Source: Macrostomum lignano
Taxonomy: Eukaryota
Assembly (NCBI GenBank): GCA_002269645.1
Contig: NIVC01000041.1
Coordinates: 1 to 64,000 of the forward strand
Direction: 5' to 3'
Length of the DNA: 64,000 bases
The translations under genes and the position numbers were made by a program. Of this stretch, positions 1 to 63,700 are shown piece after piece. Position 1 is the first letter of the stretch. Each line of letters begins with the position of its first letter. The notes beneath the pieces are model-generated. The model was not told the origin of the DNA. It saw only the letters and a program-made list of their open reading frames with translations, and did no database searches.

Positions 1-18375
<18,375 letters not shown>

Positions 18376-21155: not shown

Positions 21156-22259
21156 TCAGCACGTGATCCAGCTGCCACCGCAGCATGGCTGTCCAGTCCT
21201 CTCTGCAGTTCGGCTGTCCTACCAGCCAAGCGTGGCCTTCAAGGTCGTCCAGACCAGCTCGTCGCACCAGATGCCGAGCATCGGATCCGCTCTGGTACTT
21301 CGATTCGCCGACTATTGCCAGCAGCAGCGGCACTGGGTGCCGAGGTCGTCGACCTGGAACGGCGGCAAAGGGCGCCATGACCCGCCTGACAAGCTTGTCC
21401 AGTTTGTGTCGCTGAAGTTGGTTCGGCAGCAGCAGCAGCTGGACGGCGTGACACTCGGCCAGTAGACGACGAGCTTCCCGACTGAGCTCGTTGATGGCGC
21501 CATCAGCAGCATCTGGGTTGGCATACGAACTCAGGAAGTCGGACAGCGCTACTCGGTTGCTGAACCAGCGATAGCGTCGGATGTCGGCCTGAGTTTCGCC
21601 GGGGTTTGAATTAGCCACGATGCTGTAGGCCACGCGGGTTAGCAGGGGGTCTGAAAAGGAAAAATAATTTCGACAGATTTATCGTACAGAACAAAACACT
21701 GCATCTGTTGCAGTGGGTCACGGGCAGACTCCAAGTCTCAAGCCTCACCAACGCTGCAGCAGGCGTAGACGGTCTGGAGTTCAACAGTCGCACCACATCC
21801 GGCCGCATCAGCCAGTGACAGGCGCCCCTCAGGCAGAGTGGCGAACAGGCCCGGGTCCTCAGCCAGGGTGAGCACCTCCACGCCACGGATGTCCATGTGC
21901 AGGTAGCCCTGTCGCCTCGCTCGAGCCAGGCCGTCCACCAGCTGACGGCAGTCCGCCTCAGTTCCGGCCGCTCGCAGCTCCTCGCCAGTCAGCAGGAAGT
22001 CCAAGCCGCAGGAGCAGCAGAAGCCTGTGCCACCCTGTGCCAGACTGTGCCCGCTGAGCGCCTGCCAGCCCCGGCTATCGATGAGGCGCAGGAGGCTGCG
22101 TCTTCGCGCGTAGGATAAAAAAAAGTGCGCCGAACCGATCACGGATTCGAACTCGCGACTGGCGGCTGCGCAGGCCAGCAGGTCGGAGACTGCTGTCAGG
22201 CGCAGGAAAATCTTCGCCAGCAGCTCCGGGGGCAGCCTGGGCAAGCCGCTATTCGGCAT
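21139..22259 (-). CDS. F-box protein, 2 exons, about 340 aa, C-terminus FBXO4-like
   Basis: Exon 22259-21749 (ATG; LPRLPPELLAKIFLRL..DLLACAAASREFESVI is an F-box), donor G|GTGAGG, 98-nt intron, acceptor ttttcAG, exon 21650-21139 (TAG). Phases match (G+AC = Asp). Confidence 0.8.
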
Positions 22260-22539
22260 GTTGATCAATCCAATCTGTTGACTCAAGTCCGACTGCAGTC
22301 GCGGCAGCTCATTATTTATCGCATGCCCGACCGTTCATCATTTTTGTTCTTTTTAATGAGCTCGACTCTCGAGTTGCGATTTTGTTTGACTGCTCACACT
22401 GCTTGTCGTTTGGGGAACGGATTTGGGAGGAGAAGTGAGTCTGAGCCTTACTAGGGCTCGGATGATTTACCGCGTTGAAAACTAAAACTGAGTGCACTAA
22501 TTTTGGTAAGGTAGCAGTGGCGTCGGTTCTCAAGCCATG

Positions 22540-28045: not shown

Positions 28046-28348
28046 CGCTGTGGAAAATTCTCGTGTTCTAGTTTTCTGAAGCCATGGTGTGTATTGACTT
28101 ACTGCGAACTTGGAGCAACACTATTGAAGTCTGGCGAACTAACTGGATTAAAAAAAACTACTCTGGTTTGTCTATGGTAAAAAGCTGTTTTGACATGGCG
28201 CATCGAAAATCAAGAAAAAATCTCTACTTTGCTTTGGTTCTCGCTTATTAGTAGTGATTGACACATCTACAAGTAGGTATAGTAGTATAGTAGTACATTC
28301 CGACATTCCCAGCATATTAATAAATCGAGTTTCCACTTCACCAGTTAA

Positions 28349-31272
28349 TCAGACAAAACAGCGAAGGCGAAGAGCCAGCGGCACCGAAACCAGCGACATC
28401 AGCAGCGTCAGGACATTCGAACCTCGGAGTCGGAGAACTCCGCTAGAAGGCAGAGGCTGCCCCGCCGTCGCCGCTGGAACCTGCTGACTTCGGCGACTGC
28501 CTTCATCTCGACCTTCGTCTCCGGCCACTTCAAAACTCGAAGCGCCGATGTCGTCTTCCTCTCCAAAAGCGGCATTGTCCTTCAGGACACCAACGTCGCT
28601 GCTACCGCTTCTGCCGCTGCCGCCGTCGCCGCCGCCGCCTCGACCTCTGCCGTCGCCGGTCAGCCAATGAACGGCCAGGCCCAGCGGCCAGTTGGCCGAG
28701 TGGCCATCGATTTTGTCCGTGACGAACAGTCGCTGCTCCGGCGGGAAACCGTAGCCTTTGGACAGCAGGTTGGAGATGTGCACCAGGCCGATACAGGCAT
28801 AGGGCGCGTACCGTCCAGTGCTGACTGGGCTGGCGCAGGCCGTCCGGGCAGCCGAGATCAGGTACGCTACGCTCAGGTTGGCAGGCACTGGCTGGGCGGC
28901 ACTCGGCCACCGAGAGTAGTACGTGTTGGCCGAGTAGTAAAACGAGGAGACGGCCACGAACCGCTCCGAGATCGGCACGGGCAGCCTGGGAGTGGCCGAA
29001 GGAACCTCAAGCTATTATCGACTGTCTCACCTGTGCTCTCCCCTTATCTTATCTATAAATCAGTCTCACCTGTGCTCCCCCCTTATCTTATCTATAAATC
29101 AGTCTCACCTGCGCTCCCCCTTATCTATAAATCAGTCTCAACTGTGCTCCTCCCTTATCTATAAATCAGTCTCAACTGTGCACCTCCCTTATCTATAAAT
29201 CAGTCTCACCTGTGCACCCCCCTTATCTATAAATCAGTCTCACCTGCGCTCCCCCTTATCTATAAATCAGTCTCACCTGTGCACCCTGGCAGCCTGCAGC
29301 CGGTGCTCGTGCTGCTGTGAGCACAGGTCGTACCTTTCAGCGTCGTCAACCTGACTGTCGCCCTGCACCACAACCGTGATGGCACCGAAGCTGAAGTTGG
29401 CCGAGAAATTCGCCGCCAGGCAGGGCGTCACAAAGTGTCCATCGCCGCTATCCTCGCTGTGCCCGAGCAGGTCGAGCGTCACCTGAAATTGTCGGGGAAA
29501 TTTTTTCGAAAACAATACAATACGCATTCACGCTACTGTAAGTAGCTAGAATTATAATGCTTAGATTTTTTAATAAACGTTATTTTGAAATGCTAAATTA
29601 TCAATAAAATCTGCATCGCGGAGCAAATGTCTCAAATGTGTCACCAAAATCTGCCTCGCCTGGTTTCACAATAATTAGCCTCAACTGTGTCACAATAATT
29701 AGCCCCACCTGTGTCACAATAATTAGCCTAACCTGTGTCACAATAATTAGCCTCACCTGTGTCACAATAATTAGCCTAACCTGTGTCACAATAATTAGCC
29801 TCACCTGTGTTACAAAAATTAGCCTCAACTGTGTCACAATAATTAGACTAAATTGTGTCACAATAATTAGCCTCAACTGTGTCACAATTATTAGCCTCAC
29901 CTGGTGTCACAATAATTAGCCCCCACCTGTGTCACAATAATTAGCCTCACCTGTGTCACAATAATTAGCCCCCACCTGTGTCACAATAATTAGCCTCACC
30001 TGTGCCACAATAATTAGCTGCATTTGTGCCACAATAATTAGCTGCATTTGTGTCACAATAATTACCTGATTACATATTATAATTAACCCTCTAAACGCAC
30101 CTTGGACATGCCCAGAGTCTGGTAGCTATGCTGATGCAGCACGAACACTCTTCCCCCCAGCGTCCGAAAATTCGCCACAAACTCATCGGACATGGCCGGC
30201 CATTCCGGCTGGAAAACGATCTGCGTTGACCCGCCGCCCATGTCCAACAGTCCGTAGGTGTTGCCATGGCGACCCAGCGAATTCATGAGAAAGTTCACAG
30301 CCAGCCAGCCGTACAGAGCCTCCTCAGTGCCCGTCAGCACTCGGGCCGACACCGAACCCAGCCTCCCGCCCTTGCCTGCCGCGTCTGACAGCGCCCGCTT
30401 CGCCGCCTTCAACAGCCGCAGCTGGTCGGAGCGCTGAAGGCTGCGCAGGCCGGCCGTGGCCGCCAGGACCGCCTGTGGCGGCGGCGCCTCCGCTGGCACC
30501 CGCTCGCTGGCGAAGGCCAACAGCGGCGCCAGGTTGCCGGCCACCCGCTGGGGGAAATGGCGATAAGCGGACAGGCCCGGCCGGACGCTCTCGTAGTCTA
30601 GGCGGACCAGGCGGAGGCCGGCCGAGTGGCTGGGATCCGGCCGGAAGTGCATCACGTTGATCCGGGTGCCGGTGCTTCCGGCATCGAGTACCAACAGGTA
30701 TTTGTCAGCAGCAGCGTTCGGTTGCTGCGTCGGTTGCTTGGCGGACTGTGTCGGTTGCTGGGTGGATGAAGTCGGTTGCTGGGTGGAATTCGGCGGTTGT
30801 TGGGCGGATGAAGTCGGTTGCTGGGCGGAATTCGGAGGTTGCTGGGTGGAATTCGGCGGTTGCTGGGTGGAATTCGGCGGTTGCTGGGTGGAATTCGGCG
30901 GTTCCTGGGTGGAATTCGGCGGTTGCTGGGCGGATGAAGTCGGTTGCTGGGCGGATGAAGTTGGTTGCTGGGTGGATGAAGTCGGTTGCTGGGCGGATGA
31001 AGTTGGTTGCTGGGTGGAATTCGGCGGTTGCTGGGCGGATGAAGTCGGTTGCTGGGCGGATGAAGTTGGTTGCTGGGTGGATGAAGTCGGTTGCTGGGTG
31101 GATGAAGTCGGTTGCTGGGTGGATGAAGTCGGTTGCTGGGTGGATGAAGTCGGTTGCAGTGTGATATTCCGGTCAAATGTTTTCAGCAGTTTGCCATCTG
31201 ATGGAGATGCCGGCTGAGACCCCCAAACACTGATCCACCACCGAGGCTCAAGAGAAATAGAAAGCAGATCAT
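28349..31272 (-). CDS. GDA1/CD39-family nucleoside triphosphate diphosphohydrolase (apyrase; ENTPD5/6-like core) with signal peptide, mucin-like repeat and hydrophobic C-tail
   Basis: ACR motifs: DAGSTG (ACR1), ATAGLR (ACR2), GTEEALYGWLAVN (ACR3), DMGGGSTQ (ACR4), NWPLG (ACR5). Exons 31272-30101, 29482-29277, 28985-28349 with matching phases. One extra G is needed in the G5 run (plus-strand C 31220-31224) to join the signal peptide MICFLFLLSLGGGSVFG to the catalytic frame. Confidence 0.88.
29020..29282. repeat. About 33-35-bp minisatellite containing copies of the NTPDase exon-2 donor
   Basis: Plus strand TCTCACCTGTGC..CCCCTTATCTATAAATCAG repeated. Confidence 0.9.
29640..30065. repeat. 24-bp minisatellite TGTGTCACAATAATTAGCCTCACC
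   Basis: Direct, about 17 copies in NTPDase intron 1. Confidence 0.93.
30740..31158 (-). repeat. 21-bp coding repeat (about 20 units) translating as QQPTSS(T/A) / QQPPNST
   Basis: All units are 21 bp, with no stop in the frame that continues into DKYLLVLDAGSTG. Confidence 0.85.
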
Positions 31273-31294
31273 CTGCTGGCCTCCAACAATATTG

Positions 31295-31308
31295 GTTACC
31301 ATGGAGAC
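31295..31308. promoter_or_regulatory. RFX X-box-like motif GTTACCATGGAGAC
   Basis: Reverse complement GTCTCCATGGTAAC fits the 14-bp X-box consensus; about 25 bp upstream of the NTPDase ATG at 31272. Confidence 0.5.
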
Positions 31309-31984
31309 GCTGTTAAGTTAATTGCAGGTAATTTCGTCGAAAATTTCTCTAACTGTTGCACTCGAAAATCTTCGACAGCAATGAATGCTTTTTTATTGAG
31401 AGAATGCAATTGTGGAAATATTTTCTGCGAGCTTCTGGTTGTTTGGCCGTCTGCTTTTTGCAAATGAAGAAGACTTTGGGGCTGTTCGCGTATTTCCCTG
31501 CCACCGCATGGCTCTCAGGGAAGGATATGGGAATTATTTGTACAGTTTTAGCCTCCCAAAAAACAAAAAAAACTGCCGAGAAAAAACCGCGCATGCGGCC
31601 TGCTGGTTCGAGGGGAATTGTGGTTGGGCAGGCAGGCAGCTGCCGGTGTCGAAAGCTTTGGCGCAACCGCAGTTTACCCTGCGGAATATCCGGGCGGGTA
31701 GATTGATTGGCCCAGATAAACTGCAGAATAAGTGCGCCTGCTGCAGCCAAGGTTTTGATATTTTAGAGGGGAAATGGGATCGCACTTTGATTCAGTGCGT
31801 GTCTGACGCCACCGAGGAGGGGAGGAGATTTGACCTAAAATTTTTGTTAAATACCAAAAACTGAGGAGCTCACCAGGGGTTAATTGAACACGGGAGTTGA
31901 AAAAATCTTGCAGCTGTGATTGACAGCACAGTTGGCAGGTGGCTTCTTGATGTGGCCGCTGCGGACAGTGTCCTCTTTATCGCA

Positions 31985-32585
31985 CTCCTCTCCTCTCCTC
32001 TCCTGTCCTCTCCTCTCCTCTCCTTTTTTCTGCTCTGCTCTCCTCTCCCTTCATCTCTCCCGTCATTTCCTCTCCTCTCCTCTCCTCTGCTCTTGCTCTC
32101 CCTCCATCTCTCCCATCATCTCCTCTCCTCTCCTCTCCTCTGCTCTTGCTCTCCCTTCATCTCTCCCATCATCTCCTCTCCTCTCCTCTCCTCTGCTCTT
32201 GCTCTCCCTTTATCTCTCCCGTCATCTCCTCTCCTCTCCTCTCCTCTGCTCTTGCTCTCCTCTCTTTTCCTCTCCTCTCCTCTCCCTGTAATTTCCTCTC
32301 CCATAATCTCCCCTCCTCTCCTCTCCTCTCCTCTCCTCTCCTCTCCTCTCCTCTCTTTTCCTCTCCTCTGCTCTGCTCTCCTCTCCTCTCCTCTCCTCTC
32401 CTCTCCTCTCCTCTCCTCTCCTCTCCTCTCCTCTCCTCTCCTCTCTTTTCCTCTCCTCTGCTCTGCTCTGCTCTGCTCTCCTCTCCTCTCCTCTCCTCTC
32501 CTCTCCTCTCCTCTCCTCTCCTCTCCTCTCCTCTCCTCTCCTCTCCTCTCCTCTCCTCTCCTCTCCTCTCCTCTCCTCTCCCTTC
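31985..32585. repeat. (CTCCT)n-based pyrimidine tract
   Basis: Direct. Confidence 0.96.
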
Positions 32586-33249
32586 TCTTATTCAATCAAG
32601 TCACTTTACAGCCACGCCGAGGTTGCAGCTTAGTGAATCGCAGTCATACGCTCGAACATTTAGAGACGTGAACTTATTGCATCTGGTACGATGGCGGCTG
32701 TTCATTTACACATTTTTATCCAACGCCTGCTTCGACCGTCAGAGTCGCATGAAATGCTATGCGGATCTGACGGTTCAAGAATCTCTCAAGCTGCATCTCG
32801 GCAGTGTCTTCAAGCAGGAAAGACACGCGAAGACCATCTGGCAGGCCTGCATATACATTATCCATTTGCTAGTTAGCCCCGCAACGAAAATCTGAACAAG
32901 CCGAGTAATTGAAAATCCCAATAGGCCCAAGATTGGGGTTCGGGATAATTGGATAGCGTTTGCAGGGAAGAACACGCACCTGATCCCTGCACTGCTGGTG
33001 CAGTTTAAGCTGACTTCCCCTAAGAATGAATCGGTCCGTATTTTTCGGCAGATAAAATCTATAGTAGGATTCCCTATATCCGGTCATCATGTACTTTTCC
33101 AAACCAACGACTTTCTTTATCTCCTTTGAAGATATAAGATCCTGTAATATTGTAATGGCCCTGCATCATTTTGAAAATTATGTATTTTGTTATACTCTGT
33201 GATGCTTTGTTAAACTTTGCCATTCCTAATAGCTTGCAGCACAAATAAT

Positions 33250-33570
33250 ACTGACACTACTGGCACTGCTGACGCTACTGACACTACTGACACTACTGAC
33301 TGACACTACTGGCACTGCTGACGCTACTGACACTACTGACTGACACTACTGGCACTGCTGACGCTACTGACACTACTGACTGACACTACTGACACTACTG
33401 ACACTACTGATACTACTGACTGACACTACTGACACTACTGACTGACACTACTGACACTACTGACACTACTGATACTACTGACTGACACTACTGACACTAC
33501 TGACACTACTGATACTACTGACTGACACTACTGACACTACTGACTGACACTACTGACACTACTGACTTTC
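33250..33570. repeat. (ACTACTGAC)n-type repeat
   Basis: Direct. Confidence 0.93.
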
Positions 33571-33949
33571 TATTGCGTAGCTTTTGTATTCAACACAAAT
33601 ATAAAATCAGGTCGCACCCTGTGTACTCGTACGAGAAAACGGAAACACACCAGAAGTGCAGATCTACCGAATTGCCATTTCAACGGCTGCTGATTGCCCC
33701 CCCCCCAGCAACAGACCCCAGGCTTTTTGCCCGGGGAGTTCGGCTCCCCTCAACAGTTCGCTACGTGCCAGAACTTGTTATGTCAAGCAGTTCCTCTTGA
33801 CTTTGAAAGGCGCTCTGTACGACAGGTCTGTTTGACTCTCCGAGCCTTCATCTATTCGCATTTTACAAGTAAGACACTTCATCCTCTGGTCGCTAAGCAT
33901 CTTAGGCAGCATTTGCAGTATCGGGCACTGAACTTCAGCTTTCCATGTA

Positions 33950-34800
33950 TCACTGCTACAGCTTCATCAGTGTAACTCCTACAGCTTCATCAGTGTCACT
34001 CTTACAGCTTCATCTGTGTCACTCCTACAGCTTCATCTGTGTCACTCCTACAGCTTCATCTGTGTCACTCCTACAGCTTCATCAGTGTCACTCTTACAGC
34101 TTCATCTGTGTCACTCCTACAGCTTCATCTGTGTCACTCCTACAGCTTCATCAGTGTCACTCCTACAGCTTCATCTGTGTCACTCCTACAGCTTCATCAG
34201 TGTCACTCTTACAGCTTCATCTGTTTCACTGCTACAGCTTCATCTGTGTCACTCCTACAGCTTCATCTGTGTCACTCCTACAGCTTCATCAGTGTCACTC
34301 TTGCAGCTTCATCAGTGTCACTCCTACAGCTTCATCTGTGTCACTCCTACAGCTTCATCTGTGTCACTCCTACAGCTTCATCTGTGTCACTCCTACAGCT
34401 TCATCAGTGTCACTCTTACAGCTTCATCTGTGTCACTCCTACAGCTTCATCTGTGTCACTCCTACAGCTTCATCAGTGTCACTCCTACAGCTTCATCTGT
34501 GTCACTCCTACAGCTTCATCAGTGTCACTCCTACAGCTTCATCTGTGTCACTCCTAAAGCTTCATCAGTGTCACTCCTGCAGCTTCATCTGTGTCACTCC
34601 TACAGCTTCATCTGTGTCACTCCTACAGCTTCATCAGTGTCACTCCTAAAGTCTCACCTGTGTCATTCGTACAGCATTTTCAGTGTCACTCCTACAACTT
34701 CATGTGTGTCACTCCTACAGCCTCACCTGTGTCACTCGTACAGCATTTCAGTGTCACTCCTACAACTTCACGTGTGTCACTCCTACAATCTTATCTGTCA
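33950..34800. repeat. 23-bp minisatellite TGTGTCACTCCTACAGCTTCATC
   Basis: Direct. Confidence 0.95.
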
Positions 34801-35216
34801 TTGTAATTTAAATTTTAAAGTAAGTTAAAGTTAGAGTTCATTTTTCGCAGCACACTACTTATTGATAGGCAAGTAGACAATTTTTTTCAAATTCAAAAAA
34901 TAAATAGCAAAACTGATCCTTTTCTCAACTGAGATAATATTTTCCGAACGAAGTTAAAAGTACAGTCAAAGTTCAGGTGCTCAGCGCGAGGACTATAATT
35001 TCGTTGCCTGTGTGTTAGCCTGAGCCAGAGCACGTTGGCAGGCTGCCAGAATGAATGAATGATGCCAGCAGATTTATATTTTTGCCTTGCCCTTTTCGCG
35101 TCAGCTAGAAATGAGAAAATAAAAATATTTGTTTTAGTCTTAATTGTTGAAATTCTTAGTTAAATTTCGGTTGCTAGGGTATCCTGAATATCGGCTAAGC
35201 CAGTGGCTTCGTTGCT

Positions 35217-37362
35217 TCACCAAAGATTTCTTCTTTTGCCGCGCAGGGGCTTGAATCCCCTAGCGTAGATTATGTCCTCGCTGGCCCACGGGATCTGGCT
35301 GCCGAACTGGATGTCTGCGGGTAATTTGTTGCGGGCGCTTATAAGGTGCTTTGGGGGCGCTTATCAGGGTAATTTGGGGGCGCTTATCAGGGTAATTTGG
35401 GGCTTTGTGGGCGCTTTTAAGGGTGCTTTGGGGGCGCTTATCAGGGTAATTTATGAGCGCTTGTAAGGGTGCTTTGGGACGCTTATCAGGGTAATTTATG
35501 AGCGCTTGTAAGGGTGCTTTGGGACGCTTATCAGGGTAATTTATGAGCGCTTGTAAGGGTAATTTGGGGCTTTGTGGGCGCTTTTAAGGGTGCTTTGGGG
35601 GCGCTTATCAGGGTAATTTATGAGCGCTTGTAAGGGTGCTTTGGGACGCTTATCAGGGTAATTTATGAGCGCTTGTAAGGGTAATTTGGGGCTTTGTGGG
35701 CGCTTTTAAGGGTGCTTTGGGGGCGCTTATCAGGGTAATTTATGAGCGCTTGTAAGGGTGCTTTGGGACGCTTATCAGGGTAATTTATGAGCGCTTGTAA
35801 GGGTGCTTTGGGACGCTTATAAGGGTGCTTTGGGGGCGCTTATCAGGGTAATTTATGAGCGCTTGTAAGGGTGCTTTGGGACGCTTATCAGGGTAATTTA
35901 TGAGCGCTTGTAAGGGTGCTTTGGGGGGGCTTATACGTAAGGGTGCTTTGGGGGCGCTTATCAGGGTAATTTGGGGGCGCTTATCAGGGTAATTTGGGGG
36001 CGCTTATCAGGGTAATTTGGGGGCGCTTGTAAGGGTGCTTTGGGACGCTTATAAGGGTGCTTTGGGAGCGCTTATAAGAGTGCTTTGGGGGGGGGCTTAT
36101 ACGTAAGGGTGCTTTGGGGGCGCTTATCAGGGTAATTTGGGGGCGCTTATCAGGGTAATTTGGGGGCGCTTATAAGGGTAATTTGGGGGCGCTTATCAGG
36201 GTAATTTGGGGGCGCTTATCAGGGTAATTTGGGGGCGCTTGTAAGGGTGCTTTGGGACACTTATAAGGGTGCTTTGGGGGGGGGCTTATAAAGGTGTTTT
36301 GGGGGCGCATAAAAATTTTGCTTTGGGGGCGCTTCTGAGGGTGCTTTGGGGGCGCTTATAAGGGTGCTTGGGGGCGCTTATAAGGGTGCTTTAGGAGCGC
36401 TTATAAGGGTGCTTTGGAGGCGCTTATAAGGGTGCTTTGGGGGCGCTTATAAGGTGCTTTGGAGGCGCTTATAAGGGTGCTTGGGGGCGCTTATAAGGGT
36501 GCTTTAGGAGCGCTTATAAGGGTGCTTTGGGGGGCTTATACGTAGGGTTATTTGGGGGCGCTTATATGATGTACTATATATATATTTACGTCGTATATGC
36601 TCTTTTATTTCTGGGCAATCTTTCAACGGATACAATTAACTCTCTCAGTGAGATTCCTATAATTGACGCTGTCATGCTTAATTGGTTACTAATTAATCCG
36701 CCACTGATAAAGCACTGGCTACTAATCAATCCATACAATAATATTGTAAATTCTCACTATCTACATGCACACAGTCATGATTGGATTTCATAGAAAAGTA
36801 CATTCTGTCCTAATTTGCCCAATTACTCAATACTCACCGTAGGTTTTGTACCGTTTTTTCACCTGGCCCGTGGTCGTTTGCACTTTGTAGTTGAAACTGC
36901 CTGCAATTTAGGGAATAGGAATGCTATCTATTTATAAAACTACGACTTCAAAAGTTGCGGTCAAATTATAAATTCCAATTAGTCAAGCTGCATTGAAGAA
37001 CAGGATGGAGTTAAAAGGAGAGGAGAGGAGAGGAGAGGAGAGGAGAGGAGAGGAGAGGAGAGGAGAGGAGAGGAGAGGAGAGGAGAGGAGAGGAGAGGAG
37101 AGGAAAAAGTTGAAAGATGGGTAGCAGGCGGAGGTTCAGCAGAGGTCTAGCAATTTATCGTGTTGCTACAGTAACGAGTTAATAAAAGTATCGCTATTGC
37201 CCTTTGAAGCGAAGTTGTCCCGTTAAAACTTTGATGCGCCCGTTGAACTCGCGCGGTTGCCTCACCTTCTTCATCAGCATCCCGCTGCGTTTCCAACTGG
37301 AGGGCGCCAGCGGTAACCAATAACAACAGTAGCGTTGTGGCAAGTCTTAGATGAAGGAACAT
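35217..37362 (-). CDS. Secreted prohormone-like precursor, 85 aa, with amidation signal (..YARGFKPLR-G-KRR)
   Basis: Exons 37362-37266 (ATG, signal peptide MFLHLRLATTLLLLLVTAGA; donor G|GTGAGG), 36900-36838 (ttgcAG..G|GTGAGT; SFNYKVQTTTGQVKKRYKTY), 35314-35217 (ccgcAG; DIQFGSQIPWASEDIIYARGFKPLRGKRRNLW*). All junctions are phase 1 and the frame is open. Confidence 0.75.
35320..36560. repeat. About 22-bp minisatellite family GGGGCGCTTAT(C/A)AGGGT(AAT/GCT)TT
   Basis: Direct; fills intron 2 of the prohormone gene. Confidence 0.93.
37015..37105. repeat. (GGAGA)n
   Basis: Direct. Confidence 0.95.
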
Positions 37363-37475
37363 TTTTACCTGTTGCCTTTAATTTGACTGTGGAGAGGCTG
37401 AGAGTCGCATGGGGGGCAAAGTTCGAAATTTAAGGATTAAATTCTATTCCAAAGTAGATCCTCTGCTCAAATCTG

Positions 37476-37480
37476 ATTGG
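37476..37480 (-). promoter_or_regulatory. CCAAT box upstream of the prohormone gene
   Basis: Plus-strand ATTGG about 115 bp upstream of the ATG; short motif, may be chance. Confidence 0.3.
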
Positions 37481-37929
37481 ACGAGCCGTCATCAAGAGCT
37501 TCGAAGCTGATTTGGGACCAATGATGGAAATCGCTGCATCAAATATGATCCAAAAAACTGGTTGATGAACTGTCATAAATTTCAGCCAGGTTATTTACAG
37601 TTTAATCGGGGCTGGGTGCCAAATGATAAGCCAATTCACTTCAGCTCCTTTCTGAGTCAAACTTTTGAGAAAAAAAGCATTTTATATTTCTTCTAAATGA
37701 AATCCAGAATAGAAAATGATTTATTTAAAAAAAGCCGAGGGCAGAGAGGATAAAAGTCTCCCCAGACTATCGTAGTATTTTTTGAATAGCGAGAAAATTT
37801 AAAGCTAATAATTTCGTATCGGCCTGTGTGAAAATGGGGCTGCAAATCACAGCATGGGAGGCTCTTGACTGGCTTTAACGAGGTCTTTTGGAACATAAGA
37901 CTGATTTCTTGTGGAGAAAAGATTGATAG

Positions 37930-38320
37930 ATACAGTGAAAGGATACTGACAGATAGAGTGACAAGAGAGTGACAGACAGAGTGAAAAGAGAGTGACAGAA
38001 GGAGTGAAGGGATAGTGACAGAAGGAGTGAAAGGATAGTGACAGAAGGAGTGAAAGGATAGTGACAGACAGAGTGAAGGGATAGTGACAGAAGGAGTGAA
38101 AAGATAGTGACAGACAGAGTGAAAGGATAGTGACAGACAGAGTGAAAGGATAGTGACAGACAGAGTGAAAGGATAAGTACAGATATAGTGAAAGGATAGT
38201 GAATGAGGAAAGAAAAGAGAGTGACAGCAGGAGTGAAAAGAGAGTGACAGAAAGTGTGAAAAAAGGATGACATGAGTGAAAGAAGAGTGACAGAAGATTG
38301 AGGGCAGAGTGACAGGAGTG
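37930..38320. repeat. Degenerate about 22-bp purine-rich repeat GTGACAGACAGAGTGAAAGGATA
   Basis: Direct. Confidence 0.85.
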
Positions 38321-38367
38321 AAAAAAGCCAGAAATGCACTAAACAACAGCAAATACGCGATCAGAGC

Positions 38368-40326
<1,959 letters not shown>

Positions 40327-47251: not shown

Positions 47252-55481
<8,230 letters not shown>

Positions 55482-55699
55482 GAATGGGCGGAAGAGACTG
55501 GGTGCCAACCCTTGCAGAGGTCAGCTGTGCTGCAGTTCAGCCCTGGCCGCCTTGGCTGGAACAGTTGTCAGGCATGTGTGCACGCGAATCAAAGCCAGTG
55601 TTGCGGGGCGATGAGCGGCCAGACAAAGCCCGCCAATAATCTGGCGGCTAAAATTTCTCCAACAAAAAAGAAACTTAAAGTGCGAGCCGAAGCAAGATG

Positions 55700-60728: not shown

Positions 60729-63700
60729 ATGCTACCCCGCTTGGCTAAACAGAGGCAGTGCGGGTTCGATTTTCCAAGCACCGGAATAATCGATTTAGAA
60801 AAAAAGACTGCCAGAGGTGGCTGGTGGCAGAGGCTTTGGAAATCCGACCCGACTGCATCTTTCAGTTCTGCTGGCGGGATAACTCAGGTGAGTGTTTTGA
60901 GCAGCTGGGGGTATCTCACCTTGCCGTTTCTCTTCCATTGTATTTGTCTTCTATGGAGACGCATTGGAGAGGTGGGGAAAATTTTGATGAGGCGAAAAAG
61001 AAGACGCCTCTGAGGCCAGCGGTTTTGGGTTCCACGGGAGCGCGTGAGGATTTTCCCAGACTGGCGGCTCTAAGGGCCCTAAGCTGATCTCCTATTGGTC
61101 CGGCCTTGTTCCCCACTAAAACAGGCTATAAAATCCTGTGCGAAGAAGCCTAAGGAAGGCTTAAACTTCCTACTGAACGCGAAGTTGCTCAAGTTTGATC
61201 AGAATAAAACTCATCCAGCTGCTCGGCATGAACAAGAACTCAACGGACGTTGAAGCTCGGGTCGAAGTGGACGACAAAGCCGCTTCTGACGCTGCTAATG
61301 AAGTCAGCAACGATGCTGTTGCTGACGAGGAGTCCACTGAACAACAGCAGCGACCGCAGCGGCCTGTGAGGCAGCGGCTCACCCGTCAGGAGCGGCGCCG
61401 TCAGAAGAAACTCGAACGGCGAAGGCGGCAGCTTCGCGAGGCGAAAAGTTTCTGCAAGAAGTTCATCGCCTTCATATTTAGCCACCTGGGCCTATCGGGC
61501 TTCATAGTGGCCTACACCTTTGTTGGCGGGCTGATCTTCCGGGCGATCGAGATGCCCGAGGAGCGGCTGGTCAAAGATGAGGCTGTCAGCTTCCGGAGGA
61601 GGACTACCGAACTGCTGGTCGAGCAGCAGCTGTCTGAGCTCTGCCCTGCCGAGTCGAACTCGAGCTCAGCGATCGGCTTAGCCTGCTCGGAGAGTCTCAA
61701 CCGCCGACTCAGAGAGTTAGCCAACCAGACCGTGTCGGGCATCATCTCCAATGTCACCTGGTTGGTGAAGGAGAGAGGCTGGAACGGCAGCTTCGATGAG
61801 GAAGAGTTTACGTGGAATTTCGCTGGAGCCCTGCTGTTTGTTGTGACCGTGATTACCACAATAGGTGAGTAGCAACAGTCTGCTATCTGCTTGTATTTGC
61901 CAGCAATAATCTACCATATTAATACATTACTTTAATATTTGTGCAAGCAACAGTCTCAAAAAGTGCACAAACTCAGCTTAAACTCGTACTACGCAGTAAA
62001 ACAACCTGGCAACATTGGGAAGTCAATGATGATAGCATATTTTACAAATCAATTAGCTAATTGAAAAAAAAGATAATTTTTATTCGAATGAAATTAACTT
62101 CGAATTTCATCTAAAGCCAGCCTGGAGCGTGTTCGAAATAGTGTACCGGAACTCGGCAGAATGCGATATTCGAGTATGAGCACTGATTATTTGACTGAGC
62201 AATGCGTCCCGTCTCCCTGCTCATTCTCTGGCTGAGATTCTGAGTACGAGTAACACATTATTGTGGGACTTGTGCCCGAAAATTGGTCGTGCGATTCACA
62301 GTTATGAGGGCCAAACCCCAGCATGTGATCTTGGTTATAAAATTAGTGCTTTTGGATAATGTGAGGCCGTACTTATGTATGGAAAGTTGTAAAATCATCT
62401 CACATCATATTCACCGCGGCCTAAACACGATTGAAATTTTAGAACCAACACAAGAGAACATGTTGACTAGCTTGTACTTGAAATTCCTGAGATGCAAAGC
62501 CCGAGACAAGATTACAGAAATCACCCCATCCCGTTAATCCCACCCACGACATTCTGGGACTGGCTTGATCCAACTCTATAGCTCTTCGATATACTCGTGT
62601 GCGGAGCCAGTACTGGCTTATCGTCCTTAATCATGCTCAGAAAATAGCCCGCAGACAGATGAAGGAGAGCCGCGGAGGCCGCGATCGCAGTTCTGTTTGG
62701 TATCAGCTATGTTAGTAACGCTATATGCGCGATCGAATTTGCTTAGGAAAGCGTTAATACAGTTGCGCAGTTTTGAGTGACTAAGTCAAGCCTTGGGGGC
62801 CTGTCTGCTTTCTAGTGCTGTCCTTTTGTGTCTGGTTGTCATAATTGTAAAGTCATTTTCACTACTGTCTGTCTTTATCAGTTTGGTTATTCATTGTCAC
62901 ATACTGTCCACTTGTCCGTCAGTCTTTTACGGGGTAACGTCAGCCTGTCTGTCTATCTGCCTGTCTATTAGCAGCATACTGTCTGTGTCTGCCTGTCTAT
63001 TAGCAGCATAGTGTCTGTGTCTGCCTGTCTATTAGCAGCATAGTGTCTGTGTCTGCCTGTCTATTAGCAGCATGGTGTCTGTGTCTGCCTGTCTATTAGC
63101 AGCATAGTGTCAGTGTCTGCCTGTCTATTAGCAGCATGGTGTCTGTGTCTGCCTGTCTATTAGCAGCATAGTGTCAGTGTCTGCCTGTCTATTAGCAGCA
63201 TAGTGTCTGTGTCTGTCTGTCTATTAGCAGCATAGTGTCTGTGTCTGTCTGTCTATTAGCAGCATAGTGTCTGTGTCTGTCTGTCTATTAGCAGCATAGT
63301 GTCTGTGTCTGTCTGTCTATTAGCAGCATGGTGTCTGTGTCTGTCTGTCTATTAGCAGCATAGTGTCTGTGTCTGTCTGTCTATTAGCAGCATAGTGTCT
63401 GTGTCTGCCTGTTTATTAGCAGCATGGTGTCTGTGTCCGTCTGTCTGTCAATCACCCTTGAACTGCCCCCCTCCGCTTGCCCATTTCTGTCAACCCGTTT
63501 CGCACCCCAGTCTATTTTCACAGGCCAATGCCATCTGTTAACGAACGCCAAAAGTGCAAACTCGACCGCGTGTGGGGAGAAATTAGAAATGGGAAGTTAA
63601 TAAGACTACCAATCCCGACAGCCTTGACTAAGATTTAGCCGAAATCCCCTTCAATTTGAGCCGGGACTGAAACTCGGCTCCCCACGGGAACACAAAATTG

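What the first reader, a model, noticed from the sequence alone, without database searches (positions are those of the whole stretch)
35217..37362. Hidden three-exon neuropeptide precursor predicted to release a 32-residue ..ARGFKPLR-amide
Seen: three small minus-strand exons (97, 63, 98 nt), invisible as one ORF, splice with canonical sites into an 85-aa protein: signal peptide, acidic spacer, KKR site, YKTYDIQFGSQIPWASEDIIYARGFKPLR, then G-KRR. Established: Gly followed by basic residues is the prohormone-convertase/PAM amidation signal. Inference: the product is a single-copy peptide ending F-x-x-x-R-amide, like the tachykinin/natalisin class but with KPL instead of xGx, and it embeds an allatotropin-like ARGF. 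I do not recognise it as a described flatworm peptide, so it may be a new family.
Basis: partly seen in the sequence, partly recalled or inferred. Interest (0 to 1): 0.85.

Follow-up and report, generated by a model that had tools for sequence, protein, structure and literature searches.

The report
Candidate flatworm amidated neuropeptide gene
Three small exons in this Macrostomum lignano window do splice into an 85-residue protein with every textbook mark of an amidated neuropeptide precursor. It matches no known peptide family, and no transcript or orthologue could be found to prove the gene is real.

Summary
Minus-strand exons 37362-37266, 36900-36838 and 35314-35217 (97/63/98 nt) join through GTGAG donors and CAG acceptors into 258 nt, or 85 aa. 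The product has a signal peptide with an AGA|L cleavage site, an acidic spacer, a KKR site, one peptide, then G-KRR-NLW-stop.

The window is Macrostomum lignano. A public UniProt model of this locus (A0A1I8JMK5) uses the same exon1/exon2 junction, but it is chimeric and frameshifted.

Bare GT/AG splicing to a 'G-KR' end is nearly free by chance. With strong splice consensus, this is the only such model on either strand of the window. Five percent of 400 shuffles gave any model, and none matched its codon score. The proposed frame is the best of three in every exon.

An exhaustive HMMER search, Pfam and the literature gave no homologue. The FxGxR-amide (tachykinin), allatotropin, NPY and pyrokinin motifs are not met.

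Verdict: a plausible orphan prepropeptide gene (about 0.5) that remains unverified. The rivals are a chance model, 5' exons of the downstream ENTPDase gene, and a secreted protein that is not a neuropeptide. Interest is modest.

The parts
37266..37362 (-). Exon 1 (97 nt): ATG, signal peptide and the start of the acidic spacer. It ends in phase 1 at donor AAG|GTGAGG.
   Evidence: An in-frame TAA lies 18 nt upstream. Read-through without splicing gives only a 71-aa ORF.
37303..37362 (-). Signal peptide, residues 1-20 (MFLHLR / LATTLLLLLVTA / GA, with an A-x-A site before L21).
   Evidence: Read directly from the sequence. It passes a crude von Heijne-type rule that only 5 ATGs in the window pass. 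AF2 predicts a helix over residues 3-21.
36901..37265 (-). Intron 1 (365 nt), containing a (CTCCT)18 microsatellite.
36838..36900 (-). Exon 2 (63 nt, phase 1/1): the rest of the spacer, KKR, and the first residues of the peptide. Its donor is ACG|GTGAGT.
   Evidence: The stop-to-stop ORF is only 26 codons and the exon nearly fills it. The same exon1/exon2 junction is used in UniProt model A0A1I8JMK5.
36851..36859 (-). KKR (residues 47-49): the predicted prohormone-convertase site that frees the peptide's N-terminus.
   Evidence: The role is inferred from established convertase specificity.
35315..36837 (-). Intron 2 (1523 nt), about 80% of it a 23-nt minisatellite (35329-36566).
35217..35314 (-). 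Exon 3 (98 nt): the bulk of the peptide, then G-KRR-NLW and TGA.
   Evidence: It is the second-best codon-score island in the 6.6 kb around the locus, both strands. GC3 is 0.75. The sequence is unique in the window.
35241..35314 (-). Exon-3 part of the predicted mature 29-mer YKTYDIQFGSQIPWASEDIIYARGFKPLR. The first 4 1/3 codons are at 36850-36838.
   Evidence: The calculated monoisotopic mass of the amide is 3460.793 Da.
35229..35240 (-). G79-K80-R81-R82: the amidation donor Gly plus a basic cleavage site.
   Evidence: The role is inferred from established PHM/PAL and carboxypeptidase chemistry.

Best explanation
This is a small, unannotated three-exon gene of Macrostomum lignano that encodes an 85-aa secretory prepropeptide.

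Inferred pathway:
1. Signal peptidase cuts after A20.
2. A PC2-type convertase cuts after KKR49 and within or after KRR82.
3. A carboxypeptidase trims the basic residues.
4. PHM/PAL converts G79 into a C-terminal amide.

The result is one 29-residue peptide, YKTYDIQFGSQIPWASEDIIYARGFKPLR-NH2, plus an acidic 26-residue spacer peptide. The product would act as a neuropeptide or peptide hormone, presumably on a GPCR. It appears to be lineage-specific (an orphan).

Shown here: the sequence architecture, splice-site quality and coding bias. Inferred: transcription, splicing, processing, amidation, neuronal expression and signalling.
For: - The exons, phases and translation are exact.
- Both donors are strong (GTGAGG, GTGAGT) and both acceptors are CAG.
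- The proposed frame has the best codon score in all three exons.
- The exons are among the top coding-like islands of the 6.6 kb around the locus.
- It is the only strict-consensus signal-plus-amidation model in 128 kb of real sequence. Only 5% of 400 shuffles gave any such model, and none reached its codon score.
- A public gene model built independently on an older assembly uses the same exon1/exon2 junction and frame.
- The upstream gene has its own stop codon and an AATAAA signal.
- The downstream ENTPDase gene has a plausible start of its own.
- The layout SP - short spacer - KKR - ~29-mer - GKR(R) - short tail is exactly that of verified planarian prohormones such as Smed-npy-3 and npy-8.
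Against: - No transcript, EST or peptide evidence could be reached.
- The exact 85-aa product is absent from 5.8 billion clustered proteins.
- No orthologue turned up among 1.84 billion representatives, although NCBI M. lignano proteins and flatworm-like Logan transcripts are in that collection.
- There is no AATAAA or ATTAAA within 1.3 kb downstream of the stop, only AATATAAA at +137.
- Exon 1 has a weak codon bias (GC3 0.50).
- The filter criteria were post hoc.
- In the real-sequence null, the CDS codon score is only in the top 8%.
Confidence: 0.5

Rival explanations
1. There is no gene. A signal-like ATG ORF, a short ORF and a 'G-KRR-stop' ORF happen to lie within 2.2 kb on one strand and can be joined on paper.
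For: With only GT/AG required, every signal-like ATG in the window, and 8 of 10 shuffles, can be completed to an amidation-type C-terminus. No homologue, exact protein or literature record exists. There is no canonical poly(A) signal. 8% of stop-free 85-codon stretches of the real window score as well on codon usage.
Against: Under strict splice consensus it is the only model in the real window, and 0 of 400 shuffles match its codon score. The frame is the best of three in all three exons. A third-party model uses the same exon1/2 junction.
Confidence: 0.25
2. Exons 1-2 are real but belong to a larger transcript. They would supply the signal peptide and 5' end of the ENTPDase5/6-like gene 5.6 kb downstream, or be fused to the upstream gene as in UniProt A0A1I8JMK5. 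Exon 3 would then be intronic or an alternative terminal exon.
For: The phase-1 donor of exon 2 is in frame with the CD39 ORF through the acceptor at 31197 (tctccatcAG|A). As assembled, the CD39-frame ORF 31312-30083 has no ATG before its ACR1 motif. The public model links exons 1-2 to the repeat region just upstream of the enzyme.
Against: An ATG at 31302 opens a signal-like ORF right at the head of the CD39 ORF, and one extra G in the G5 run at 31224-31220 fuses them in frame, so the enzyme probably has its own start. A related Logan transcript has SP + 12 aa + ACR1 with no resemblance to exons 1-2. The public model rests on an indel-ridden assembly, a weak donor (cg|GTTCGC) and an acceptor inside exon 1. 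This reading leaves the coding-like, correctly phased exon 3 unexplained.
Confidence: 0.13
3. The gene is real and secreted, but the product is not a neuropeptide. It could be, for example, a small gland or seminal-fluid protein whose basic clusters are not processed.
For: Nothing here shows neuronal expression. AF2 (single sequence, low confidence) puts KKR inside a predicted beta-hairpin at residues 34-51. Macrostomum has many lineage-specific secreted proteins (background knowledge).
Against: The protein has no cysteines and no confident fold: mean pLDDT is 59 and the C-terminal 29-mer is disordered. Two dibasic/tribasic sites bracket one peptide that ends in Gly, which is the classical prohormone layout seen in verified planarian precursors.
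Confidence: 0.1

Closest known systems
Planarian NPY-superfamily prohormones (Smed-npy-3, -8, -10; Collins et al. 2010, PMC2953531)
   Same: Same precursor architecture: signal peptide, short spacer, KKR/KR, a single 28-31-residue peptide, G-KR(R), short tail. Smed-npy-3 also gives a 29-mer. Tyr at -9, Ala at -8, a basic residue at -4 and Pro at -3 from the C-terminus resemble YAIAGRPRY-amide of npy-10.
   Different: The C-terminus is KPLR-amide, not RPRF/Y-amide. A profile built from nine planarian NPY peptides gives the candidate no score at all, whereas 82% of its own shuffles get one. Pfam Hormone_3 does not hit even at E<=10.
Protostome tachykinin-related peptides (FxGxR-amide) and arthropod natalisins (FxxxR-amide, often FxPxR-amide)
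   Same: Both have a C-terminal Arg-amide with Phe at position -5. The Pro at -3 matches the FxPxR form of some natalisins; that motif is recalled from memory, so it is a lead and not a test.
   Different: The defining Gly of tachykinin-related peptides is replaced by Pro. Those precursors carry several short copies, whereas this one has a single 29-mer. Natalisin is known only from arthropods. No precursor similarity was detected.
Allatotropin (GFK...ARGF-amide type)
   Same: It shares the tetrapeptide ARGF.
   Different: In allatotropin, GF is the amidated C-terminus of a 13-14-mer that begins GF[KR]. Here ARGF is internal and is followed by KPLR-G-KRR. There is no further similarity.
Pyrokinin/PRXamide peptides (planarian Smed-ppl-1: YFSPRM/L-amide)
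   Same: It shares a Phe...Pro...basic/hydrophobic C-terminal pentapeptide and amidation.
   Different: The order is F-K-P-L-R, not F-x-P-R-L, so the PRX-amide core is absent. ppl-1 is multi-copy.

Membership tests
Generic amidated neuropeptide / peptide-hormone precursor | N-terminal signal peptide | tested here: met
   MFLHLR + LATTLLLLLVTA + G-A|L, an A-x-A site. It passes the crude rule, which only 5 ATGs in the window pass. AF2 predicts a helix at 3-21. SignalP itself was not available.
Generic amidated neuropeptide / peptide-hormone precursor | Peptide flanked by di/tribasic convertase sites, with a C-terminal Gly before the basic residues | tested here: met
   KKR49 | Y50...R78 - G79 - KRR82.
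Generic amidated neuropeptide / peptide-hormone precursor | The mRNA exists with these junctions, and the peptide is processed, amidated and made in neurons or endocrine cells | not testable with these tools
   No M. lignano transcript data could be reached. The spliced protein could not be looked up and is absent from the protein collection.
Generic amidated neuropeptide / peptide-hormone precursor | Conservation of the peptide and its processing sites in related species | tested here: inconclusive
   The exhaustive HMMER search returned only the same-locus model plus two repeat artefacts. Coverage of other Macrostomum species in that library is unknown.
Tachykinin-related peptides (protostome) | C-terminal F-x-G-x-R-amide | tested here: not met
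   The C-terminus is F-K-P-L-R-(G), with Pro in place of the invariant Gly.
Tachykinin-related peptides (protostome) | Activation of a tachykinin-type GPCR | not testable with these tools
   This needs a receptor assay.
Natalisin | Multi-copy precursor of short F-x-x-x-R-amide peptides, restricted to arthropods | tested here: not met
   The pentapeptide fits F-x-P-x-R. However, the precursor holds one 29-mer, the animal is a flatworm, and no precursor homology was found.
Allatotropin | A 13-14-mer that starts GF[KR] and ends in GF/GY-amide | tested here: not met
   ARGF is internal. Gly-dibasic follows KPLR, not GF.
NPY/NPF superfamily | C-terminal R-x-R-F/Y-amide and a family profile match | tested here: not met
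   The end is KPLR-amide. An HMM of Smed-npy-3 to -11 gives no score. Pfam gives no hit at E<=10.
NPY/NPF superfamily | Intron inside the codon of the penultimate Arg (recalled from the flatworm npf literature) | tested here: not met
   No intron interrupts the ...KPLRG... codons. Exon 3 runs uninterrupted from D54 to the stop.
Pyrokinin / PRXamide | C-terminal F-x-P-R-[LMV]-amide | tested here: not met
   FKPLR-amide has L and R in the opposite order. Planarian ppl-1 peptides are YFSPRM/L-amide.

The most novel reading that the evidence does not exclude
The gene is real and conserved in Macrostomorpha. It would found an undescribed flatworm family of long, single-copy F-x-P-x-R-amide peptides that signal through a tachykinin/natalisin-type or orphan rhodopsin-type GPCR. 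That would show an R-amide peptide system in an early-branching flatworm lineage that planarians and parasites lack.
Probability: 0.12. Interest if true: 0.5.

Novelty: new member of a known kind. Interest (0 to 1): 0.3.

Why it matters
If real, it adds one unannotated, lineage-specific amidated peptide to the signalling toolkit of a regeneration and reproduction model flatworm. It also shows that small, multi-exon prohormone genes split by minisatellite-filled introns are missed or mis-fused by current M. lignano annotations. An Arg-amide peptide is unusual for flatworms: only one R-G-KR terminus occurs among the planarian prohormones. Receptor pairing would therefore interest people working on neuropeptide evolution. 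It would not change any general concept, since orphan neuropeptide precursors are common in every phylum.

Tried and rejected
- Word-indexed homology search with the 85-aa protein: no hit.
- Exhaustive HMMER over 1.84 billion representatives: three hits. One is the same-locus UniProt model. The other two, a bacterial repeat adhesin and a fish Ig-repeat protein, score only 24-28 bits per repeat unit, and their E-values are inflated by 6-8 identical repeats. They were rejected as spurious, so exon 2 is not an Ig-domain remnant.
- Pfam at E<=10: nothing.
- Literature strings (PLRamide, GFKPLR and others): the only hit is a typo for FXPRLamide. The planarian prohormone supplement has no PLRG and only one R-G-KR terminus.
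- McVeigh 2009, McVeigh 2012 and Koziol 2016, the main flatworm npp catalogues, are not held. Identity with an npp family listed only in those papers cannot be formally excluded.
- NPY-superfamily hypothesis: rejected by a profile test.
- Exact-sequence contig look-ups for the neighbouring GPCR, P0003 and P0001: nothing on record. The spliced protein was not accepted for look-up.
- AF2 on the single sequence: low confidence and uninformative beyond the signal helix.
- Rfam on 30-42 kb: nothing.
- Paralogues or repeats of the exons within the window: none.
- Poly(A) signal search: no canonical hexamer.

Full report
**What is in the sequence**

On the minus strand, exon 1 (37362-37266, 97 nt) opens with ATG. 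An in-frame TAA lies 18 nt upstream, and the exon ends at AAG|GTGAGG. Exon 2 (36900-36838, 63 nt) follows ...ccctaaattgCAG and ends at ACG|GTGAGT. Exon 3 (35314-35217, 98 nt) follows ...attacccgCAG and ends in TGA.

The 258-nt CDS translates to MFLHLRLATTLLLLLVTAGALQLETQRDADEEGSFNYKVQTTTGQVKKRYKTYDIQFGSQIPWASEDIIYARGFKPLRGKRRNLW.

The peptide between KKR and G-KRR is 29 residues (Y50-R78), not 32.

Intron 1 (365 nt) carries a (CTCCT)18 microsatellite. Intron 2 (1523 nt) is almost entirely a 23-nt minisatellite. Without splicing, exon 1 reads through to an unremarkable 71-aa ORF. The exon 2 ORF is only 26 codons from stop to stop, and the exon nearly fills it. Exon 2 is symmetric (phase 1/1), so skipping it would keep the frame but remove KKR.

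**Where the window comes from**

The only real hit of an exhaustive HMMER search was P0003, which is UniRef100_A0A1I8JMK5 of Macrostomum lignano. Its first 261 residues are 99.6% identical to the window ORF at 40326-39544. The best hit to the ENTPDase exon is another M. lignano model, A0A1I8FH34. Both models align to this locus in alternating frames. They were therefore built on an indel-rich older assembly of the same region. The window is M. lignano, a hidden polyploid with SL trans-splicing in roughly 30% of genes and a mean intron length of about 1.1 kb (PMC10468722).

P0003 is a chimera. It leaves the upstream gene through a weak donor (cg|GTTCGC) just before that gene's own stop codon, and it enters exon 1 at an internal AG. 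After that it drifts out of frame across three indels and jumps to the minisatellite ahead of the ENTPDase gene. This gives partial third-party support that exons 1-2 look like exons. It says nothing about exon 3.

**Is the model more than chance?**

I enumerated all models on both strands with a signal-like ATG ORF, at most two introns of 40-2000 nt, a 50-150-aa product, and [KR][KR]-x5-45-G[KR][KR]-x0-10-stop.
- With bare GT/AG, all five signal-like ATGs of the window can be completed, as can 8 of 10 dinucleotide shuffles. 'Splices with canonical sites into such a protein' is therefore not evidence by itself.
- With GTRAG donors and YAG acceptors, the candidate is the only model in the real window.
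- Under that strict rule, 20 of 400 shuffles gave at least one model, and 0 of 400 gave one with a codon score as high as the candidate's.

A codon log-odds table trained on 2034 codons of confident exons in this window puts the proposed frame first in each exon. The whole CDS scores +0.16 against -0.44 and -0.46 bits per codon, and GC3 is 0.50/0.70/0.75 against 0.76 in the training set. Among maximal stop-free scoring segments in the 6.6 kb around the locus, both strands, exon 3 ranks 2nd, exon 1 ties for 5th and exon 2 ranks 8th.

Three caveats apply. The criteria were post hoc. Against real, non-shuffled stop-free stretches the CDS is only in the top 8%. There is no AATAAA or ATTAAA within 1.3 kb downstream, only AATATAAA at +137.

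**Mechanism (inferred)**

The N-terminus has a basic n-region, a 12-residue hydrophobic core and an A-G-A|L site. The spacer L21-V46 is acidic (pI 4.2). KKR and G-KRR are classical convertase and amidation signals. The predicted product is YKTYDIQFGSQIPWASEDIIYARGFKPLR-NH2 (3460.793 Da monoisotopic, pI 8.4).

I consider it unlikely.

A single-sequence AF2 model is low-confidence (pLDDT 59). It shows only the signal helix, a hairpin at residues 34-51 and a disordered C-terminal peptide. That is compatible with a prohormone rather than a folded domain.

**Comparison with known families**

No homologue was found in any of these searches:
- the 5.8 billion-cluster search;
- the exhaustive search of 1.84 billion representatives, where the two extra hits are repeat-inflated artefacts of 24-28 bits per unit;
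- Pfam at E<=10;
- the literature.

The planarian prohormone catalogue contains no PLRG and only one R-G-KR terminus, Smed-npy-9.

The overall architecture is the same as in verified planarian NPY-superfamily precursors. Smed-npy-3, for example, is SP - NKDELDILF - KKR - 29-mer - GKR. The last nine residues loosely resemble YAIAGRPRY-amide of npy-10. Even so, a profile of nine planarian NPY peptides gives the candidate no score, while 82% of its shuffles score. No intron splits the penultimate-Arg codon. It is therefore not an NPY family member.

The other families fail on their defining motifs. Tachykinin-related peptides require F-x-G-x-R-amide, and here Pro replaces Gly. Natalisin (F-x-P-x-R in some insects, recalled from memory) is multi-copy and restricted to arthropods. 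Allatotropin ends in GF-amide, whereas ARGF here is internal. Pyrokinins end in P-R-L/M-amide, as in planarian ppl-1 with YFSPRM-amide, not P-L-R-amide. The candidate works like a generic amidated prohormone but belongs to no named family.

**The main structural rival**

All three neighbouring genes lie on the minus strand. The upstream gene ends at 38368 and has an AATAAA at about 37724.

Downstream, an ENTPDase5/6-like gene has a CD39-frame ORF at 31312-30083 with no ATG before its ACR1 motif LVLDAGSTGTR. The phase-1 donor of exon 2 is in frame with that ORF through the acceptor at 31197. Exons 1-2 could therefore, in principle, be the enzyme's 5' exons.

Three points argue against this. An ATG at 31302 opens a signal-like ORF (MVTNIVGGQQMICFLFLLSLGGGSVFGG…) directly at the head of that ORF, and one extra G in the G5 run at 31224-31220 fuses the two in frame. 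A related Logan transcript (P0006, SRR30276804) has a signal peptide, 12 residues and then ACR1, with no similarity to exons 1-2. The rival also leaves the correctly phased, coding-like exon 3 with its R-G-KRR-x3-stop ending unexplained.

**Verdict**

The interpretation as an amidated prepropeptide is the best available reading (about 0.5). It remains unverified because no transcript, orthologue or peptide data were reachable.

The rivals are a chance model (about 0.25), exons belonging to a larger transcript (about 0.13) and a secreted protein that is not a neuropeptide (about 0.1).

The tachykinin/natalisin and allatotropin resemblances do not survive a membership test. 'New family' is premature. 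At most this is a new, orphan member of the well-known class of amidated neuropeptide precursors. Interest is modest (0.3).

Noticed in passing
window 30083-31312 (-), G5 run at 31220-31224: The ENTPDase5/6-like (GDA1_CD39) gene has no in-frame ATG before ACR1 as assembled. An ATG at 31302 with a signal-like ORF sits in the +1 frame. One extra G in the G5 homopolymer joins it to the enzyme ORF, which suggests an assembly or haplotype frameshift. A (PTSSTQQ)n minisatellite (about 31170-30700) lies in frame between the signal and the catalytic domain.
   Followed up: partly
window 28300-40326 (-) versus UniProt A0A1I8JMK5 and A0A1I8FH34: The public M. lignano gene models for this region are chimeric and frameshifted. 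One fuses the upstream gene, candidate exons 1-2 and the repeat ahead of the ENTPDase gene. The other starts inside the ENTPDase gene. Their names ('Myb-like', 'DAGKa domain-containing') look unreliable.
   Followed up: partly
window 7758-8840 (-): An intronless 360-aa rhodopsin-type GPCR ORF (7tm_1, E = 9e-15). It is only weakly similar to solved peptide receptors (SSTR4, OX2R). It is a possible orphan peptide receptor about 27 kb from the candidate. Exact look-up found no record.
   Followed up: partly
window 36838-36900 (-): Exon 2 is symmetric (63 nt, phase 1/1), so skipping it keeps the frame but deletes the KKR site. Its A6 run encodes the two lysines, so a homopolymer length error there would destroy the model. 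The older-assembly model reads this stretch with three indels.
   Followed up: partly
window 33946-34787, 35329-36566, 37934-38327, 38938-39536, and many others: Minisatellites are exceptionally dense. Several unrelated 23-nt units occur, (AGAC)~150 sits inside or next to the upstream gene, and there are many 20-30-nt arrays elsewhere. These create long spurious ORFs throughout the window.
   Followed up: no
window 31577-31747 (both strands): A GC-rich island with coding-like codon scores on both strands, between the candidate and the ENTPDase gene. No ORF or family could be assigned.
   Followed up: no
window 49959-55508 (-), 61195-61872 (+), 21738-22286 (-): Exons of a Ser/Thr protein kinase, a possible two-pore/Ion_trans_2 channel exon (below the Pfam cut-off), and an F-box protein ORF. 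These appear to be ordinary neighbouring genes.
   Followed up: no
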